Source: Octopus sinensis
Taxonomy: Eukaryota
NCBI RefSeq assembly: GCF_006345805.1
Contig: NC_043002.1
Span: 93,248,001-93,312,000, forward strand
DNA length: 64,000 nt
Direction: 5' to 3'
The notes beneath the pieces are model-generated. The model had not been told where the DNA came from and made no database searches. It worked only from the letters and a program-made list of their open reading frames with translations. Positions 8,449 to 63,789 of the stretch are shown in pieces; within the stretch, counting starts at the first letter, position 1, and every line of letters starts with the position of its first letter. The position numbers and the translations under genes are program-made.

Positions 8449-8935
8449 ATCATCATCATCATCATCATCATCATCATTTAACGTCCGCTTTCCATGCTAG
8501 CATGGGTTGGACGGTTCAACTGGGGTCTGGGGAGCCCAAAGGCTGCACCAGGCCAGTCAGATCTGGCAGTGTTTCTACAGCTGGATGCCCTTCCTAACGC
8601 CAACCACTCCGAGAGTGTAGTGGGTGATTTTATGTGCCACCGACACAGGTGCCAGACGAGGCTGGCGAACGGCCACGCTCGGATGGTGTTTTTTATGTGC
8701 CAACGACACAGGTGCCAGACGAGGCTGGCAGACGGCCACGCTCGGATGGTGTTTTTATGTGCCACCGACACAGGTGCCAGATGAGGCTGGCAAACGGCCA
8801 CGATCGGATGGTGTTTGTTACGTGCCCACAGCACGGAGGCCAGTCGATGCGGTACTGGCTACGGCCACGTTCGGATGGCTTTCTTGTGTGCCACCGGCAC
8901 TGGTACCACAAAGATACAAATTCCATTGATGTTCA

Positions 8936-8940
<5 letters not shown>
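8449..8940 (-). mobile_element. (GAT)n-tailed repeat family C (RTE 3'UTR-derived), young copy with ~60-bp internal repeats
   Basis: (cat)n ttaacgtccgctttccatgctagcatgggttggacgg...gctggatgcccttcctaacgccaaccactcc, then tandem ~60-bp units. Other copies at about 1580-1775, 5770-6010, 7700-8210, 8970-9185, 13530-13855, 21405-21750, 24790-25090, 28340-28570, 36629-37040, 50010-50660, 61175-61455, 62200-62640 and 63830-64000. Confidence 0.85.
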
Positions 8941-8972
<32 letters not shown>

Positions 8973-9479
8973 TCATCATCATTTAACGTCCGTTTTCCAT
9001 GCTAGCATGGGTTGGACTGTTTGACCGGGGTCTGGGAAGCCAGGAAGCTGCACTAGACTCCAGTCTGATCTGGCAGTGTTTCTACAGCTAGATACCCTTC
9101 CTTATGCCAACCACTCTGTGAGTATAATGGATGCTTTTTATGTGCCACTGGCACAGGGGCCAGAGGAGGCTGGCAACGGCCACGATATATATATATATAT
9201 ATACATACACACACACACTAGCAGAGATATCCAGCATTGCTCAGGATTAAAATGGCAGAGTTTGTATATATTACAGTTACGTTGAAACAAGTGATACAAG
9301 AAAGTGCAGCATTGACGACAAAACATTTGTGGAGTAAATGATGGGCTAATTCAACTAAGCAACATGCCATGCGTCCATTTGGAGTATTCCAAGCCCATGG
9401 AAAATTGGGGTGATGGGGTACGTGGTTTTTGAATGCATCAAAAAGCTGCCAGTGGATATACTTTCCTTTGTGGCAGTCA

Positions 9480-10450
9480 AGCACTGCATCTAACATGACC
9501 CATCATCTGAAGATTTGACACCTCCTTCGGGTTTGTTGTCCTATATCACTCATAAAGAAAATTTGGAGGAACTGTGGTTGTTCATTTGTGAGTAACAGGG
9601 AACCAATGATGTGATAGCCTTGCCTTTGAACTTTGAACATCAGCATAAATCCATGTTCAATTATCTCCTTAGATGCACCATATGATGTCATTTGAAATGC
9701 AGAATTGTATTGTGTGATATTGTTCAGGAAATCCTTTGACTGGATGGAAGTGCTTTCCAGAAATCCATAAGAGGTTGAGGAGGAGCTGGCAATGTTAACT
9801 TACTGCCTGAGCAGCACATCTCATTAGTTTCATTTGGAAATTTTAAACCTTTGCAGAAACAACAATTTGAATTTAGCACACCAGTTTGGACAAAATTATC
9901 ATTTTTATAAGAATAGGGTGGATCATATCTGAAAGTAGCTAGGAGTTGTGAAGAACGAATTTGTATGTAGTCTGTTTCTGAGAGCTATTCTATTGGACCT
10001 CTGTCTAATCATTAAAACATTGTTTTAATGATCTAACATTAAGTGCTGCAACATGCATTTGCTGATCTTAAGAAAGTCTCATCTGCCTTCTCTCTTGAGA
10101 CTGCATGTGACTTGCTGCAACATGCATTTGCTGATCTTGGGAAAGTCTCATTTCCTTTCTCTCTTGGGACTCCATTTGATGTACTGGAGCATGCCTTTGC
10201 TGATCTTGGGAATATCTCACCTCTCTTCTCTCTTGAGACTCCATTTAATGTACTGCAGCATGCATTTGGTGATCTTGGGAAAGTCTCATCTTCTGTCTTG
10301 AGACTCCATTTGACATGCTGCAGCATGCTTTTTCTTGATCTTGAGAAAGTCTCATCTCGCTTCTGTCTTGAGACTCCATTTAATGTACCGTTGCATTCGT
10401 TTGCTGATCTTGACAAAGTCTCATCTCTTTTCTCTCTTGAGACTCTCACA
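9480..10450 (-). mobile_element. Decayed autonomous Helitron ORF (N-terminal region)
   Basis: The - strand reads, across frameshifts, FRYDPPYSYKNDNFVQTGVLNSNCCFCKGLKFPNETNEMCCSG...SKDFLNNITQYNSAFQMTSYGASKEIIEHGFMLMFKVQRQGYHIIGSL...QPQFLQIFF. This is the conserved pre-Rep block of animal Helitrons. Confidence 0.75.
10044..10447. repeat. Tandem repeat, 6 x ~69 bp
   Basis: The tgatctt motif recurs with its g at 10064, 10133, 10202, 10271, 10337 and 10406. Confidence 0.9.
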
Positions 10451-21889: not shown

Positions 21890-23072
21890 TACCTCTGGAC
21901 ACATAAGAGGTGCAGCAACATCAAAGGAAAATTAATCGAGAAGATAGCTTTTGTATGTGGCAGATGCACAGTGGCAATAGACACCACAGATACTCAGAAA
22001 ACAGGTTCCATCACACTCCAGGGGGAGAAACTAAAAGTAGTTGATAGCTTCTGCTACCTAGGTGACCAAGTTAGTAGTGGGGGTGGATGTTCAGAGAGTG
22101 TTACCACTAGAATAAGAATAGCCTAGGCAAAGTTTAGAAAGCTTCTTCCCCTACTGGTGTCAAAGGGTTCTCGCTCAGAGTGGAAGGTAGATTGTACGAC
22201 ACATGTGTGCGAACTGCCATGCTTCATGGCAGTGAAACACAGGCCGTGACTGCGGAGGACATGCATAGGCTCGAAAGAAATGAAGCTAGCAAGATCCACT
22301 GGATGTGTAATGTCAGTGTGCACGCATAACAGTGTGTAAGTGCCCTGAGAGAAAGGTTGGACATAAGAAGCATCAGATGTGACATGCAGGAGAGACATTT
22401 GCGTTGGTATGGTCATGTACTACGGATGGATGAGGAGAGATGTGTGAAGAAGTGCCACTCTCAAACAGTTGAAGCAATCTGGGGTAAAGGTAGACCTAGG
22501 AAGACATGAATTGGGATGGTCAAGTATGACCTTTGAACGTTGGGCCTCACAGAGGCAATGATGAAAAACCGAGACCCCTGGAGATATGCTGTGACTGCAA
22601 AGACCTGACAAATGAAATGAGTTCATGGCTTGCAGGATGGCCTGCTGTGCTTACCTTAGATCATAGGGCAACTTGCTGTGCTTGAGGAGACCTATTGAGT
22701 CAAGTACATCAACATCAAAATAAAAATTCAAATGGAAATTGTTATTGTGATACATGTGCCGGTGGCACGGAAAAAACACCATCCAAACATGGCTGATGCC
22801 AGCGACACCTTGACTGGCATCCGTGCCGGTGGCACGTAAAAAGCACCAGCCTATCGTGGTCATTGCCAGCCTCCTCTGGCCCCTGTGCTGGTGGCACATA
22901 AAAAGCACCCACTACGCTCATGGAGTGGTTGTCGTTAGGAAGGGCATCCAGCTGTAGAAACACTGCCAGATCAGACTGGAGCCTGGTGCAGCCTCCTGGC
23001 TTCCCAGACCCCGGTCGAACCGTCTAACCCGTGCTAGCATGGAAAACGGATGTTAAACGATGATGATGATGA
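21890..23072 (+). mobile_element. 5'-truncated RTE LINE: ORF C-terminus, 3'UTR with 60-bp repeats, (GAT)n tail
   Basis: LWTHKRCSNIKGK...CGRC...VVDSFCYLGDQVSSGGGCSE...AMLHGSET...RHLRWYGHVLRMDEERCVKK...GRPRKT runs without a break into the family C sequence, ending gttaaacgatgatgatgatga. Confidence 0.85.
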
Positions 23073-33188: not shown

Positions 33189-33568
33189 GGATCTTTTCGG
33201 TTTGAACAGCAGTTTTTTCTAGCGGTGTCATATGAAATTGTCACCCATAATTGTGACCCTAGTATCGATCTATTGCATTTCAGTCTGTTTTAGGGTTAGG
33301 GGTAGGGGGAATGGTATCTTTTTTTCTTCACAAATGTAAATAAACCCAATCTGTTTCTTAAACGAAGGACATATTCATACGGTACAGAATGTTTTTTTTA
33401 CCTCAATGGACGTCAGTGATTGGTTGAAATTGCAGAAATTGAAGTAAAAAAACAACAAATATCTTACAAACTATAGAATTTTCTCAATAAAGCCAGTATA
33501 CGAAGTTTAAAATTTTTTTAGTTACCTAGAAATTATGTTAAAAACTGCCATTCAAACCGAAAAGATCC
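33189..33568. mobile_element. Merlin-like MITE with perfect 8-bp TSD
   Basis: TSD tcagaatg at 33181-33188 and 33569-33576; ~29-bp TIRs ggatcttttcggtttgaa(c/t)rgcagttttt. GG termini with an 8-bp TSD fit the Merlin/IS1016 superfamily. Confidence 0.8.
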
Positions 33569-33717
33569 TCAGAATGTTCTCTAGTTTTTAAGGTGTGGGG
33601 TGGTGTGTTACAAGAACTTTAGTATCGTGTTCAGAGTTTTTGTCATAAATTCTTTGATCTTATTTTGGATTTGATTTTCTTTGCAACCCCTTAATTCATA
33701 TTTATTTATTTTTTCAG

Positions 33718-33854
33718 TTGGTCTTGGATTTAATATTCGGGGTGGAATTGATATGCCCCTGGCCTGGGATACAGGAATTTTTGTGGCTCGAATCAAAGAA
33801 AAAGAAGCAGCAGATATTGATGGCCGTTTAGAAGAAGGAGATAAAATTTTAGAG
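33718..33854 (+). CDS. SYNJ2BP: Coding exon of SYNJ2BP/OMP25-like PDZ protein (N-terminal half of PDZ; phase 1 start)
   Basis: Acceptor tttttcag|TT and donor GAG|gtaaat bound 137 nt reading [46 protein letters not shown]. It has the PDZ GLGF loop and GRLxEGDKIL motif and closely parallels vertebrate SYNJ2BP (GLGFNIVGG...[26 protein letters not shown], from recall). Confidence 0.9.
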
Positions 33855-34124
33855 GTAAATCACATTTTTCTTTATTTTTTCTTTCTTTTTTTTTTCTGCT
33901 TTAATATGATTTGATTAATTATACTCGATGAAAATGACTAATGAAAACTTGTCTTCATCAAACTATATATTGTTTAAATGATTATAACTTAAAATTTAGA
34001 GTGGGGTTCAGCACACCACGACTGCTTTGCAGTGAAAATAATATCTTTTGGATTGAAGGTACTAGAAAATTAGCTTTACTTTGTTATTGAATTTTTTTTG
34101 TTGCAATTGTTGTTTTTCATCATC

Positions 34125-36581
34125 CAAAACAAATCAAAATAGATGAACATCAATGGAATTTGTATCTTTGTGGTACCAGTGCCGGTGGCACACAAGAATC
34201 CATCCGAACGTGGCCGTAGTCAGTACCGCATCACTGGCCATCGTGCTGTGGGCACATAACAAACACCATCCGATCGTGGCCATTCGCCAGCCTCATCTAG
34301 CACCTGTGTCGGTGGCACATAAAAACACCATCCGAAGACCCGGCAAGACTAGTCTGGCCATAAACCATGGCCCCTACCTGGGACGTAGTCAGTCCACCTG
34401 TGCATACCTTCCTCCTTGTGATACTTGTGAAGGCCTGTTGAGGCAAGTGAAAATCAAAATCAAATCAAAACAAATCAAAATAGATGAACATCAATGGAAT
34501 TTGTATCCTTGTGGTACCAGTGCCGGTGGCACACAAGAGAAAACCATCCGAAAGTGGCCGTAGCCAGTACCGCATCGACTGGCCTCCGTGCTGTGGGCGC
34601 ATGACAAACACCATCCGATCGTGGCCGTTCGCCAGCCTCATCTAGCACCTGTGTCGGTGGCACATAAAAACACCATCCGAAGACCCGGCAAGACTAGTCA
34701 GGCCATAACCCATGGCCCCTACCTGGGACGTAGTCAGTCCACCTGTGCATACCTTCCTTCTTGTGACACTTGTGAAGACCTGTTGAGGTAAGTGAAAATC
34801 AAAATCAAAACAAATCAAAATAGATGAACATCAATGGAATCTGTATCTTTGTGGTACCAGTGCCGGTGGCACACAAGAGAACCATCCGAATGTGGCCGTA
34901 GCCAGTTCCGCATCGACCGGCCTCCATGCTGTGGGCACGTAACACACACCATCCGATCATGGCCGTTCGCCAGCCTCATCTGGCACCTGTGTCTTTGGCA
35001 CATAAAAACACCTTCCGAAGACCCGGCAAGACTAGTCAGTCCACCTGTGCATACCTTCCTTCTTGTGACACTTGTGAAGACCTGTTGAGGCAAGTGAAAA
35101 TCAAAATCAAATCAAAATAGATGAACATCAATGGAATTTGTATCTTTGTGGTACCAGTGCCTGTGGCACACAAGAATCCATCCGAACGTGGCCGTAGTCA
35201 GTACCGCATCGACTGGCCATCGTGCTGTGGGCACATAACAAACACCATCCGATCGTGGCCGTTCGCCAGCCTCATCTAGCACCTGTGTCGGTGGCACATA
35301 AAAACACCATCCGAAGACCCGGCAAGACTAGTCAGTCCACCTGTGCATACCTTCCTTCTTGTGACACTTGTGAAGACCTGTTGAGGCAAGTGAAAATCAA
35401 AATCAAATCAAAATAGATGAACATCAATGGAATTTGTATCTTTGTGGTACCAGTGCCTGTGGCACACAAGAATCCATCCGAACGTGGCCGTAGTCAGTAC
35501 CGCATCGACTGGCCATCGTGCTGTGGGCACATAACAAACACCATCCGATCGTGGCCGTTCGCCAGCCTCATCTAGCACCTGTGTCGGTGGCACATAAAAA
35601 CACCATCCGAAGACCCGGCAAGACTAGTCAGGCCATATCCCATGGCCCCTACCTGGGACGTAGTCAGTCCACCTGTGCATACCTTCCTCCTTGTGATACT
35701 TGTGAAGGCCTGTTGAGGCAAGTGAAAATCAAAATGAAATCAAAACAAATCAAATCAAATCAAATCAAAACAAATCAAAATAGATGAACATTAATGGAAT
35801 TGTATCTTTGTGGTACCAGTGCCGGTGGCACACAAGAAAACCATCCGAACGTGGCCGTAGTCAGTACCGCATCGACTGGCCTCCGTGCTGTGGGCACGTA
35901 ACACACACCATCCGATCGTGGCCGTTCGCCAGCCTCATCTGGCACCTGTGTCGGTGGCACATAAAAACACCATCCGAAGACCCGGCAAGACTAGTCAGGC
36001 CATAACCTGTGGCCCCTACATGGGACGTAGTCAGTCCACCTGTGCATACCTTCCTTCTTGTGACACTTGTGAAGACCTGTTGAGGCAAGTGAAAATCAAA
36101 ACAAATCAAAATAGATGAACATCAATGGAATTTGTATCTTTGTGGTACCAGTGCCGGTGGCACGTGGCACACAAGAAAACCATCCGAACGTGGCCGTAGC
36201 CAGTACCGCATCGACTGGCCTCCGTGCTGTGGGCACGTAACAAACACCATCCGATCGTGGCCGTTTGCCAGCCTCATCTGGCACCTGTGTCGGTGGCACA
36301 TAAAAACACCATCCGAGCGTGGCCGTCTGCCAGCCTCGTCTGGCACCTGTGTCGGTGGCACATAAAAAAACACCATCCGAGCGTGGCCGTTTGCCAGCCT
36401 CGTCTGGCACCTGTGTCGGTGGCACATAAAATCACCCACTACACTCTCGGAGTGGTTGGCGTTAGGAAGGGCATCCAGCTGTAGAAACACTGCCAGATCT
36501 GACTGGACTGGTGCAGCTTTCGGGCTCCCCAGACCCCAGTTGAACCGTCCAACCCATGCTAGCATGGAAAGCGGACGTTAA

Positions 36582-36628
<47 letters not shown>
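34125..36628 (+). repeat. 2.5-kb tandem array of RTE-3'UTR-derived units ending in the family C core and (TGA)15 tail
   Basis: agatgaacat recurs at 34141, 34482, 34822, 35119, 35415, 35782 and 36113 (periods 341, 340, 297, 296, 367, 331). Each unit holds ~60-bp subrepeats and a (caaaat)n tract. Tail at 36583-36628. Confidence 0.95.
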
Positions 36629-37614
36629 CTCCATTTAACATCCACATTCCATGCTTGCATGAGCTGAATAGTTTGACAGAATCTAATGGGTTCGAGAATT
36701 GCCTCAGTGTCTGGTTTCTGTGGCTGGATGCATTTCCTAATGCCAACCACTTTAGAGTATGCACTTGTGAGGTTATCATGCAGCTTGCAAGCCTACAAAT
36801 CCAGGGGATGGGGTGGGATATTGTTGCCACTGCAGTTATCACCACCACCGCCTATGCCTACATTTTGTTTGCTTTCCATGCTGGCATAGGTTGGATAGGT
36901 TGTTTTAACAGTCCAAGTCATTTCCTACTGGGAGCCACTGCACTTAAAGACCGGAACTTATACATGTCATTTGATTGGATGCCTTTCCTGTCTTCAACCA
37001 GGGTGTAGTAGGTGCATGACGTCATGGCACCGATACTAGAGAGTTTGAACAGTTCTTCATGAGAGAGGAAGAATTAAAGCACCCTTAAGCTTTCTCTACT
37101 CATTTACCAACAGCTTTATGATGTGTACTTGGTGCATTTTTCATAGTTGTAGATGACGACGATGATGATTCTAGAACCTATAAAGCAGAGACAGATATTG
37201 CCAACTCCCACCAATATAATCTGGCCTCTGGTTCAGCTGATCGGCGTATTTACTCTCAGACACAATTTTGAGAGGCAGCATGCATTGAATCAGAAATTTT
37301 TAAAAATTGCAACAAGAAAAAAAAAAAAATTTTAATTTTTGCCACTGAAAATTCTTGTAAGGATGTAAAACTCACAAATCAGAATCTCAGAAAGCAAGAA
37401 CTACCTATATACAAAGCCTGAGGGAACAGTTGGTCATGACTGCAGTGCTTTTTCTCATGGTGTTTCTTCGCCATTTAAGCATTCAGATTCTTGCAAATAC
37501 TTACTTAAAGATTTGATAAAGTTGCATTGGATTTGTCTAATCTTTGTGATAAAAAAAAAAAATGGTTTATTTCAAATAATTGTCATATTATCTTTTTATT
37601 GTTGTTGAGCTCAG

Positions 37615-58084: not shown

Positions 58085-58320
58085 GATAAAGTATACCTTG
58101 TGTCTGGCACTTGTAATAAGGTATACCTTAAATCTGCTGCCTATAATTAGGCATACTTGAGTCTGGTGCCTATTATAAGGTATACTTTGAGTCTGGTTAG
58201 TATAATAAGGTGTACCTTGAACCTTATACCTATAATAAGATATACCTTGAATCTGGTGCCTATAATAAAATGTATAAGTTATACTTTGAGTTTGGTGCCT
58301 GTAATAAGTCTGGTACCTTA
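58085..58320. repeat. 30-bp minisatellite, about 7-8 degenerate copies
   Basis: gtataccttgaatctggtgcctataataag-like unit recurs near 58091, 58121, 58151, 58181, 58211, 58241 and 58280. Confidence 0.85.
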
Positions 58321-59361: not shown

Positions 59362-59940
<579 letters not shown>

Positions 59941-61576: not shown

Positions 61577-63789
61577 AACTTGACAGGAATCTGCTCTGGT
61601 GTACATTTACTTCTGAATATCTTTTATCTTTCACTTGTTTCAGTCATTAGAATGTGGCCATGCGGGAGCAGCACCTAGAAGAATTTTTAGTTGAATAAAT
61701 CAACCTCAGTTCCTTTTTTAAGCCTGGTACTCACTCTATTGGTCAGTTATGCAGAACTACTAAGTTACAGGGAAGTAACTGTCAAGCAGTGGTGGAGTGG
61801 GGGACAAACACAAGCACAAAGATACATAACCACATGGTTCCGGGTTCAGTCCCACTGCATGGCACCTTGGGCAAGTGCCTTCTGCTATAGCTTTGAGCCG
61901 ATCAGAGCATTGTGAATGGATTTGGGGGACAGAAAGTGCAAGTCCGTCGTACATACATATATATGTATATATATTTATAACCCATGCTAGCATGGAGAAC
62001 GGACGTTAAACGACGATGATGATGTGTGTGTCTTTGAGTCTGTGTTTGTCTCCTAGCCATCGCTTGAGAACTGATGTTGGTGTGTTTGGTTCAGCAAAAG
62101 AGACAATAGAACAAGTACTAGACTTACAAAGAATAAGTCCTAGGGTTGATTTGTGTGACTAAAAACCTTTAACAGAATATATATATATATATATATATAT
62201 ATCATCATCATCATTTAGCGTCCGTTTTCCATGCTAGCATGGGTTGGACGGTTTTAACTGGGGTCTGTGAAGCCGGAAGGCTTCATCAGGCCCAGTCAGA
62301 TTTGGCAGTGTTTCTATGGCTGGATGCCCTTCCTAACGCCAACCACTCCATGAGTGTAGTGGGTGCTTTTTACGTGCTACCTGCACAGGTGCCAGACAGA
62401 GCTGGCAAACGGCCACGAATGGATGGTGTTTTTACGTGCCACCGGCACGGGGGCCAGGCGAGGCTGGCAACGAACACGAGTGGATGGTGCTTTTACGTGC
62501 CAACAACACGGGGGCCAGGCAAGGCTGGCAACGGACAAACGATCGGATGGTTTGCTTAACCACAGCTGCAATTTCCACTGATGTTGATTTGGTTTGATTT
62601 TGACTGTTCTAACTAGTCTTGCCGGGTCTTCTCATGCACAAAAATATCAAATCCACTCACAAGGCTCTCATTGACCCAAGGCTATAGTAGAAGACATTTG
62701 CCAAAGGTATCACGAAGAGGGTCTGAACCTGGAGCCATGTTGTTGGGAAACAAACTTCTTACCAAACAGCCACGCTTGCACCTCTTACATCTATCTTAAA
62801 TTTTCTCCACTCTAGAGACACCAATTGTCATTAATTCAATTTTATTTTCATATCCACACATAAGTCGACTCTTCAAACAGGATAAAATTTTTCGTGAAAT
62901 GGGGGAGGGAGGCAGAAAGGATATCAAAAACCTCTTTATAAGTAAAGGTTTGTCCGTCTGTTTGTCTACCAGTCATCCATTTCTCTCATTAAAAAAGAAC
63001 ACAGAAAATTAAAACAGTAGAAACCATTATCACAGCTTGACTTAAAAATTGAAGTTATTTTTTATAATGTTTGAAAGTATGCTGTTATCTATTTTCTGTC
63101 TCTTTCTCTTTCGGGCAAATTTCTTTTCCCCGCTCTCTCTCTCTCTCTTATTCACACTCACAGACATAATACGCTCGACATCCATAAACATTCATTCATA
63201 TTTAACTGTTCATACAAAGTTTGTTCTGCCTCAATTCCCTTTCTTTTTAAAGTAATTTTTACAACAAATTATATCAAACCTATTTTTAAGTATGTCATAT
63301 TGATTTCAGATCTTACAATAAATAGTTATTTTACCTGTTATGTTCTGTCAACAGATCCATGTCTGTGTATGAGAGTTGGGTGTCATAAAAATTTTGTTTC
63401 TTTATTGTAACAATAACAAAAACAAAGAAAAAGTGAACGTTTCACTCAATTTTTTTTACTTTCTACTTAAACACGAAGAGTGGGGGGACCAGTCGATTAC
63501 ATCGACTTCAATACTCAACTGGTACTATTTTATTGACCCCCGAAAGAAGGAAAAGCAGAGTCAACCTTGACAGAATTTGAACTCGGAATGTAAATCCAGT
63601 AGAAATGCCTCTAAAAATTTTTATCCGATGTGCTAACGATTCTGCCAGCTAGCCACCTTTGTTTCGGTCAATTTTGGCCTCTTTTTCTCAGTTTAACAAT
63701 TACAATTTTTAAAATATTTTATCATAATGAAGAGCCAGTTCGACCCATAGACTGCAAAACTACGTCTTTATCATAAAAAATATATTTAA

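What the first reader, a model, noticed from the sequence alone, without database searches (positions are those of the whole stretch)
34125..36628. Intronic retro-satellite: seven tandem units built from a LINE 3'UTR, ending in one (GAT)n tail
Seen: units of 341, 340, 297, 296, 367 and 331 bp plus a terminal unit that runs into the family C core and (TGA)15. Six junctions share the sequence acacc(a/t)tccga|agacccggcaag (34334, 34679, 35017, 35313, 35609, 35976). gagaagacccggcaag is also where the copy at ~62630 begins and is homologous to the ORF-end region of the LINE at ~22600. Two units lack a 36-nt module flanked by tagtcag direct repeats. 35119-35330 and 35415-35626 look identical, while other units are mosaics. 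The hierarchy is 60-bp repeats inside ~300-370-bp repeats. Inference: either post-insertion unequal exchange (birth of a satellite from a retroelement 3'UTR), or repeated reverse transcription around a circular or re-primed RNA template. The identical junction is compatible with both.
Basis: partly seen in the sequence, partly recalled or inferred. Interest (0 to 1): 0.7.

Follow-up and report, generated by a model that had tools for sequence, protein, structure and literature searches.

The report
Retrotransposed LINE tail carrying a tandem array
This is one 2.5-kb truncated copy of an octopus-type LINE retrotransposon whose 3' untranslated region had already been multiplied into about 6.6 tandem units before it inserted here; it is a clean but ordinary example of how mobile elements seed satellite-like repeats.

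Summary
34125-36628 contains a 211-bp partial unit and six full units of 345, 338, 296, 296, 367 and 339 bp. They are joined six times by the same junction, ACACC(A/T)TCCGA|AGACCCGGCAAG. The array ends in 62-64-bp subrepeats, a ~150-bp core and (ATG)15.

A monomeric relative (contig L003) shows the parent layout: LINE ORF end (...EKTRQD*), spacer, (AAATC)n, four 62-67-bp subrepeats, core, (GAT)n. Each unit runs from the last five codons to 8 nt into the third subrepeat.

- The joined flanks rebuild an older inverted family copy, so the mid-unit 5' end is the original insertion boundary.
- The terminal unit differs by 1 of 199 bases from a separate copy at 8449-8937, but by 4-12 from its neighbours.
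- The terminal part has changed by at most about 1.4% since its ancestor with L003, while units differ by 1-9% and are mosaic.

Most likely the array evolved in the source element and was retrotransposed with 5' truncation. Only the identical U3/U4 pair looks recent.

The genome-wide junction test could not be run. This is a new member of a known kind (retroelement 3'UTR tandem arrays). Interest is modest.

The parts
34125..34335 (+). U0: 5'-truncated first unit (211 bp). It starts inside the (AAATC)n microsatellite and lacks the ORF-end and spacer part of a unit.
   Evidence: the boundary is good to about 3 nt because ATC is shared with the flank
34336..34680 (+). U1, a full unit of 345 bp. 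Its spacer variant is shared with U5.
34681..35018 (+). U2, a full unit of 338 bp and the most diverged one. Its junction variant is ACACCTTCCGA.
35019..35314 (+). U3, 296 bp, lacking the 36-nt module between the TAGTCAG repeats.
35315..35610 (+). U4, 296 bp and identical to U3, so a very recent duplication (or an assembly duplicate).
35611..35977 (+). U5, 367 bp, with an expanded (AAATC)n microsatellite at 35726-35779.
35978..36316 (+). U6, the terminal unit. It is canonical and collinear with the monomeric relative L003. It carries a private 7-bp duplication (GTGGCAC).
36317..36429 (+). The remainder of subrepeat c and subrepeat d (62-64 bp each). This is the canonical 3'UTR continuing past the point where internal units break off.
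36430..36581 (+). The family core, ending in the palindrome CCATGCTAGCATGG. It is shared by about 16 other copies in the window.
36582..36628 (+). The pure (ATG)15.7, i.e. (GAT)n, 3' tail.
36629..36790 (-). An older, diverged family copy in inverted orientation. Its 3' end abuts the array tail.
34061..34124 (-). The rest of the old copy's tail (gatgatgaaaaac... on the minus strand). It is contiguous with 36629 onwards once the array is removed, which defines the empty site.
8449..8937 (-). A separate young copy of the same subfamily, 5'-truncated at atagatgaac. It differs from U6 plus the tail region by 6 substitutions in about 470 bp.
21971..23072 (+). A decayed older LINE fragment: the C-terminal ORF region with frameshifts and stops, then 3'UTR, subrepeats, core and (GAT)n.

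Best explanation
34125-36628 is a single retrotransposition product. It is a 5'-truncated copy of an RTE-like LINE from an octopus-type genome, or of a non-autonomous derivative that shares the LINE's 3' end. The 3'UTR of the source element already carried a higher-order tandem array.

The parent layout is: ORF end (...EKTRQD*), a ~100-nt spacer, (AAATC)n, four 62-67-bp subrepeats, core, (GAT)n.

Inferred history:
1. One illegitimate event with 2-nt microhomology (GA) joined position 8 of the third subrepeat back to the fifth-last codon. This created the junction once.
2. Homology-driven unequal exchange, at the DNA level or by RT copy-choice between units, then multiplied and shuffled the units in the source lineage. 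Every unit therefore inherited the same junction.
3. Reverse transcription from the (GAU)n tail copied the array and stopped inside the seventh unit from the 3' end.
4. The cDNA joined the target, which was the (GAT) tail of an older inverted copy, at ATC microhomology.
5. The identical U3/U4 pair is the latest duplication. It may have happened after insertion.

Shown: the anatomy, the parent layout, the empty site, and the divergence pattern. Inferred: that the array sat in the source element, and the way the first junction arose.
For: 1. Parent layout. Contig L003 carries an ORF ending ...AVREKTRQD*. It is followed by a monomeric 3'UTR collinear with U6, the subrepeats, the core and the tail. 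The ORF region matches Octopus bimaculoides proteins and proteins carrying RVT_1.

2. Empty site. The joined flanks read ...catgcaagcatggaatgtggatgttaaatggag|gatgatgaaaaac. This aligns across the join with the family core end plus its GAT tail. The mid-unit start at 34125 is therefore the original 5' end. A copy truncated there lacks the ORF-end and spacer segment, so it cannot generate full units by local duplication.

3. Closest relative of U6. U6 differs from the separate copy at 8449-8937 by 1 of 199 bases, but from U0-U5 by 4-12 of 199.

4. Clock. The terminal 458 bp has 2 private substitutions, against 4 in the 8937 copy and 16 in L003. Of the 5 L003 differences that could be polarised, only 1 lies on the branch shared by the array and the 8937 copy. 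Change in place is therefore at most about 1.1-1.4%. Units differ by up to 18 of 199 (9%) in the subrepeat part and 8 of 115 (7%) in the spacer part.

5. Multi-step history. There are 10 informative sites, and 15 of 45 site pairs show all four gametes. Block 34139-34450 is 98.4% identical to 35413-35725 across a junction, against 95-96% for other out-of-register blocks.

6. The pure (ATG)15 tail suggests a young insertion.
Against: - No second locus with the junction was seen. Only one copy in this 64-kb window has it.
- The collections available here do not hold this genome. The only metagenome hit was a chance match in a bacterial contig. The protein search and the genome-contig scan found nothing.
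- The one intact relative recovered, L003, is monomeric.
- The clock argument rests on small counts. It also assumes a uniform rate and no ectopic gene conversion into the array.
- The 8937 copy could instead be a daughter of this locus.
Confidence: 0.55

Rival explanations
1. Local satellite birth. A short copy containing at least one junction (a dimer) was inserted here, and the array then grew and diverged at this locus by unequal sister-chromatid exchange. The copy at 8449-8937 is a later retrocopy of this locus's terminal part, or was gene-converted by it.
For: Exchange has clearly acted on the array: U3 and U4 are identical, the units are mosaic, and there is a higher-order block. No other junction-bearing locus has been seen.
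Against: - The spacer segments would all descend from a single inserted copy, yet they differ by up to 7%.
- The terminal part shows at most about 1.4% change since the ancestor shared with L003.
- This model still needs a junction made before integration, because of the intact 5' boundary.
Confidence: 0.2
2. A concatemer made during this one retrotransposition event. The reverse transcriptase repeatedly switched from the ORF-end position back to the third subrepeat, either on a circular ~340-nt RNA or on re-primed linear templates.
For: The junction is identical in all six units and has only 2-nt microhomology. There is a single tail. The array starts mid-unit, as a truncated cDNA would.
Against: - Units should be identical at birth and show star-like divergence. 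Instead they form nested and conflicting groups. One unit is nearly identical to an outside copy while the others are 2-9% away.
- Length variants (the 36-nt module, microsatellite sizes) are shared by subsets of units.
- Six switches at exactly the same two nucleotides would need an unexplained fixed stop.
Confidence: 0.08
3. An assembly artefact: the array, or part of it, has been inflated by misassembly of repeats.
For: U3 and U4 form an exact 296-bp duplicate. That is the pattern a spurious duplication would give.
Against: The other units all differ from one another by substitutions and indels. They cannot be duplicates of one read pile. There are no Ns.
Confidence: 0.05

Closest known systems
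Satellites and tandem arrays derived from the 3' ends of retroelements. Listed in the reviews PMC9659126 and PMC6947457: chicken HinfI satellite from the CR1 3'UTR plus partial ORF2; common cetacean satellite from the L1 3' end; PisTR-A from the hypervariable 3'UTR of Ogre; 18HT from the HeT-A 3' region.
   Same: The unit is a contiguous piece of a retroelement's 3' non-coding region plus a few terminal codons. Units lie head to tail and show signs of unequal exchange.
   Different: Here there are only about 6.6 units. They are still embedded in a recognisable element copy with its own core and tail, and they were apparently carried by retrotransposition. This is not a large independent heterochromatic array.
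Tandem monomers of the mouse L1 5'UTR and the VNTR of human SVA elements (from general knowledge, not tested here).
   Same: Both are internal tandem arrays that belong to the active element. They are inherited through retrotransposition, vary in copy number between copies, and are often cut mid-unit by 5' truncation.
   Different: The array here lies in the 3'UTR of an RTE-like LINE. It has ~300-370-bp higher-order units that themselves contain 62-67-bp subrepeats. No promoter or other role is known.
RTE-2_OV, the RTE-clade LINE transcribed in Octopus vulgaris brain (PMC9115989).
   Same: It is described as having a ~600-nt 3'UTR with a microsatellite beginning near the ORF end. That resembles the canonical parent here, which has a ~620-nt 3'UTR containing (AAATC)n.
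   Different: No tandem array is reported.
Tandem TE dimers from double insertion as satellite seeds (McGurk and Barbash model; from general knowledge).
   Same: A mobile element provides the first tandem junction, and exchange then expands it.
   Different: Double insertion would leave a core and tail inside every unit. Here the internal units have neither.

Membership tests
5'-truncated copy of a non-LTR (RTE-like) retrotransposon | Sequence collinear with the 3' end of an element that encodes a reverse transcriptase | tested here: met
   L003 has the ORF end ...EKTRQD* plus a 3'UTR collinear with U6 through the tail. The ORF region hits proteins carrying RVT_1 and Octopus bimaculoides proteins.
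5'-truncated copy of a non-LTR (RTE-like) retrotransposon | Simple-repeat 3' tail at the end of the element | tested here: met
   (ATG)15.7 lies at 36582-36628. Relatives end in (GAT)n.
5'-truncated copy of a non-LTR (RTE-like) retrotransposon | Discrete insertion with a reconstructable empty site | tested here: met
   The joined flanks rebuild the 3' end and tail of an older inverted copy.
5'-truncated copy of a non-LTR (RTE-like) retrotransposon | Target-site duplication | tested here: inconclusive
   At most ATC (3 nt) is shared at both ends, and this cannot be told apart from tail sequence.
5'-truncated copy of a non-LTR (RTE-like) retrotransposon | Placement in the RTE clade (APE endonuclease plus RT in a single ORF, and RT phylogeny) | not tested
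   Only the C-terminal ~210 aa were compared. The likeness to BovB-type C-termini is from memory. The Pfam scan of the decayed ORF pieces gave nothing.
Satellite DNA | Head-to-tail tandem units with a common junction | tested here: met
Satellite DNA | Long arrays or many loci in the genome | not testable with these tools
   There are only 6.6 units here. The source genome is not in any searchable collection.
Rolling-circle or circular-RNA-templated concatemeric retrocopy | Units identical at birth, so divergence is star-like | tested here: not met
   There are 10 informative sites. U6 is closest to an outside copy. Higher-order blocks are shared between units.
Rolling-circle or circular-RNA-templated concatemeric retrocopy | Existence of a circular RNA of unit length | not testable with these tools
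   No RNA data were available.
SINE | A pol III-type head (tRNA, 5S or 7SL) at the 5' end | tested here: not met
   ARAGORN finds no tRNA-like sequence in the window. No Rfam family matches in 33500-37500. The 5' end is LINE 3'UTR.

The most novel reading that the evidence does not exclude
The LINE's reverse transcriptase has a fixed template-switch point five codons before the stop codon. It builds tailed multimers during retrotransposition, so the element manufactures and disperses proto-satellites directly from RNA. The 5' end of the copy at ~62640, which lies 10-15 nt from the same motif, would be a second trace of that stop point.
Probability: 0.07. Interest if true: 0.7.

Novelty: new member of a known kind. 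Interest (0 to 1): 0.3.

Why it matters
The locus captures an early stage on the path from mobile element to satellite: a tandem array that still sits inside a recognisable LINE tail. The evidence suggests the array travels with the element rather than arising where it lands. If other copies exist, one duplication could seed many dispersed arrays at once.

This has a practical side for annotating octopus genomes, where LINE and SINE tails fill much of the sequence. It also makes a simple prediction that can be checked with a k-mer search. It does not point to a new mechanism or a host function.

Tried and rejected
- Junction 20-mer in metagenome contigs: one hit, a chance match inside a GC-rich bacterial contig next to HlyD-like coding sequence.
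- Junction 25-mer in genome contigs: nothing.
- Core 22-mer in viral contigs: nothing, so that collection cannot inform on this family.
- Protein search with the 136-aa ORF that spans a junction: no hit. The protein collection evidently holds almost no ORFs from octopus non-coding repeats, so I did not repeat the search on the minus strand.
- Pfam on nine window ORFs, including the LINE pieces: nothing.
- Rfam on 33500-37500: only two sub-threshold snoRNA matches over the microsatellite tail.
- Fold of the core: no better than shuffled sequence, z = 0.47.
- tRNA scan: none.
- Double insertion as the origin of the junction: rejected, because internal units carry no core or tail.
- A defined RNA 5' end at AGACCCGGCAAG, suggested by the copy at ~62630: not supported. 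That copy has LINE-like bases upstream of the motif, and its similarity to the array is ambiguous between the ORF end and the end of the spacer.

Full report
**What is there.** The window is AT-rich eukaryotic DNA (64% A+T). It is crowded with copies of one retroelement 3' end: a ~150-bp core that ends in the palindrome CCATGCTAGCATGG, followed by a (GAT)n tail. There are about 16 copies besides the one under study.

Between 34125 and 36628 the sequence is a head-to-tail array. The string ACACC[AT]TCCGA|AGACCCGGCAAG occurs six times, with the AGACCC starts at 34336, 34681, 35019, 35315, 35611 and 35978. This gives:
- a partial first unit of 211 bp (U0);
- full units of 345, 338, 296, 296 and 367 bp (U1-U5);
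- a terminal unit (U6) of 339 bp.

The terminal unit runs on into two more 62-64-bp subrepeats, the core and (ATG)15.7. Units are 93-97% identical to one another. U3 and U4 lack a 36-nt module bounded by TAGTCAG and are identical; exact period-296 identity covers 322 bp.

**What the unit is made of.** A conceptual translation of the decayed LINE fragment at 21971-22610 matches Octopus bimaculoides proteins at 71-82% identity. It also matches proteins carrying the RVT_1 domain.

One hit, P0004, ends ...AVREKTRQD. Its contig L003 reads gagaagacccggcaagactag at the stop codon. Downstream it carries a monomeric 3'UTR of about 620 nt, which is collinear base for base with U6 and everything after it. 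The order is: ~100-nt spacer, (AAATC)n-like microsatellite, 'atagatgaac...', four subrepeats, core, (GAT)n.

Each array unit is therefore a contiguous piece of the parent. It runs from the fifth-last codon of the ORF to 8 nt into the third subrepeat (CCATCCGA|). The two parental breakpoints share only GA.

Calling the LINE RTE-like rests on the tail type and on my memory of BovB-type C-termini. The clade was not tested. Petrosino et al. describe an Octopus vulgaris RTE with a ~600-nt 3'UTR containing a microsatellite (PMC9115989). It may be the same family, but this is unverified.

**The insertion boundary.** Removing 34125-36628 and joining the flanks gives, on the minus strand...catgcaagcatggaatgtggatgttaaatggag|gatgatgaaaaac... 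This aligns across the join with the family's core end plus GAT tail.

So the array is one discrete insertion into the tail of an older inverted copy. Its 5' end, in the middle of a unit, is the original end. A copy truncated at that point does not contain the ORF-end and spacer segment. Local duplication alone therefore cannot have produced the full units. At least one junction must have been present in the cDNA that integrated.

**Age structure.** A separate copy at 8449-8937 (minus strand, truncated at 'atagatgaac') differs from the terminal part of the array by six substitutions in about 470 bp. Within the 199 bp that belong to the unit, it differs from U6 by 1 base. U6 differs from U0-U5 by 4-12 bases over the same stretch.

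In a three-way comparison over 458 sites, the array's terminal part has 2 private substitutions, the 8937 copy has 4 and L003 has 16. Five of the L003 differences could be polarised using older copies in the window. Four are private to L003 and one lies on the branch shared by the array and the 8937 copy.

The terminal part has therefore changed by at most about 1.1-1.4% since its ancestor with L003. That caps any change in place. Yet units differ by up to 18 of 199 (9%) in the subrepeat part and 8 of 115 (7%) in the spacer part. Most of the divergence among units is therefore older than this insertion.

**Mode of array evolution.** The units do not show a star-like pattern. Ten substitution sites are parsimony-informative, and 15 of 45 site pairs show all four combinations. 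U1 and U5 share a spacer variant. U0, U3 and U4 share a subrepeat variant. The block 34139-34450 is 98.4% identical to 35413-35725 across a junction, against 95-96% for other out-of-register blocks. This is the signature of repeated homology-driven exchange, and it explains the identical junction without any further assumption.

**Best explanation and rivals.**
- Most likely (about 0.55), the array arose and evolved in the 3'UTR of a source element. It was then retrotransposed here with 5' truncation in the seventh unit from the 3' end. The U3/U4 duplication is the latest step.
- Local growth from an inserted dimer (about 0.2) needs the 8937 copy to be a daughter of this locus. It also conflicts with the clock argument.
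- Concatemerisation in a single reverse-transcription event, including a circular template (about 0.08), conflicts with the structured divergence among units.
- Misassembly (about 0.05) could account only for the identical pair.

The main weakness is that no second junction-bearing locus was seen. The collections at hand do not contain this genome.

**Comparison with what is known.** Tandem arrays and satellites born from retroelement 3' regions are well documented. Examples are CR1 to HinfI, the L1 3' end to the cetacean satellite, the Ogre 3'UTR to PisTR-A, and HeT-A to 18HT (PMC9659126 and PMC6947457). Arrays that belong to the element and are cut by 5' truncation are familiar from mouse L1 monomers and the SVA VNTR (general knowledge). 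This locus is a new member of that kind. It stands out mainly for its clean anatomy and its two-level repeat hierarchy.

**Verdict.** Novelty is low to moderate and interest is 0.3.

Noticed in passing
L004 540-620; L005 630-709; compare window 36530-36600: In related LINEs the ORF (...AVLERTRPTHA(S/R)MEK..) reads straight through the terminal palindrome ccaacccatgc.agcatgg and stops just before (GAT)n. The ~620-nt 3'UTR of the family in the window therefore looks like an insertion or expansion between 'gacccg' and 'ccaaccc' of a once-compact 3' end.
   Followed up: partly
window 62201-62760 (-): This older family copy carries the AGACCCGGCAAGACTAG motif but lacks about 100 nt of spacer. It abuts a different repeat (...tgtcttctactatagccttgggtcaatgagagccttgtgagtggatttg) that I recognise from memory as an abundant octopus SINE-like element.
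   Followed up: partly
window 8449-9186 (-): A young copy (8449-8937) is inserted into a (TA)n run that directly follows the tail of an older copy (8969-9186). It is a second case of insertion at or next to the tail of an earlier family member.
   Followed up: partly
window 36543-36673 and 36871-36895: The new tail and the old inverted copy form a tail-to-tail inverted repeat with 65-nt arms, 74% complementary. A second old inverted core end lies at 36871-36895. If transcribed, such inverted pairs would form long double-stranded RNA.
   Followed up: no
window 10039-10445: A 69-bp tandem repeat of 5.8 copies with 204-bp higher-order periodicity. ORFs of 136-165 aa lie on both strands and have no Pfam match.
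   Followed up: no
window 59367-59940; 58086-58268: A very long (TA)n microsatellite (about 291 copies, 87% matches). A 30-bp tandem repeat of 6 copies lies nearby.
   Followed up: no
L001 2140-2159: The junction 20-mer occurs by chance in a GC-rich bacterial metagenome contig. This shows that a 20-mer is too short for unsupervised searches of very large collections.
   Followed up: yes
window 36158-36171: A private 7-bp tandem duplication (GTGGCAC GTGGCAC) occurs in the terminal unit only. It is absent from all other units, from the 8937 copy and from L003.
   Followed up: yes
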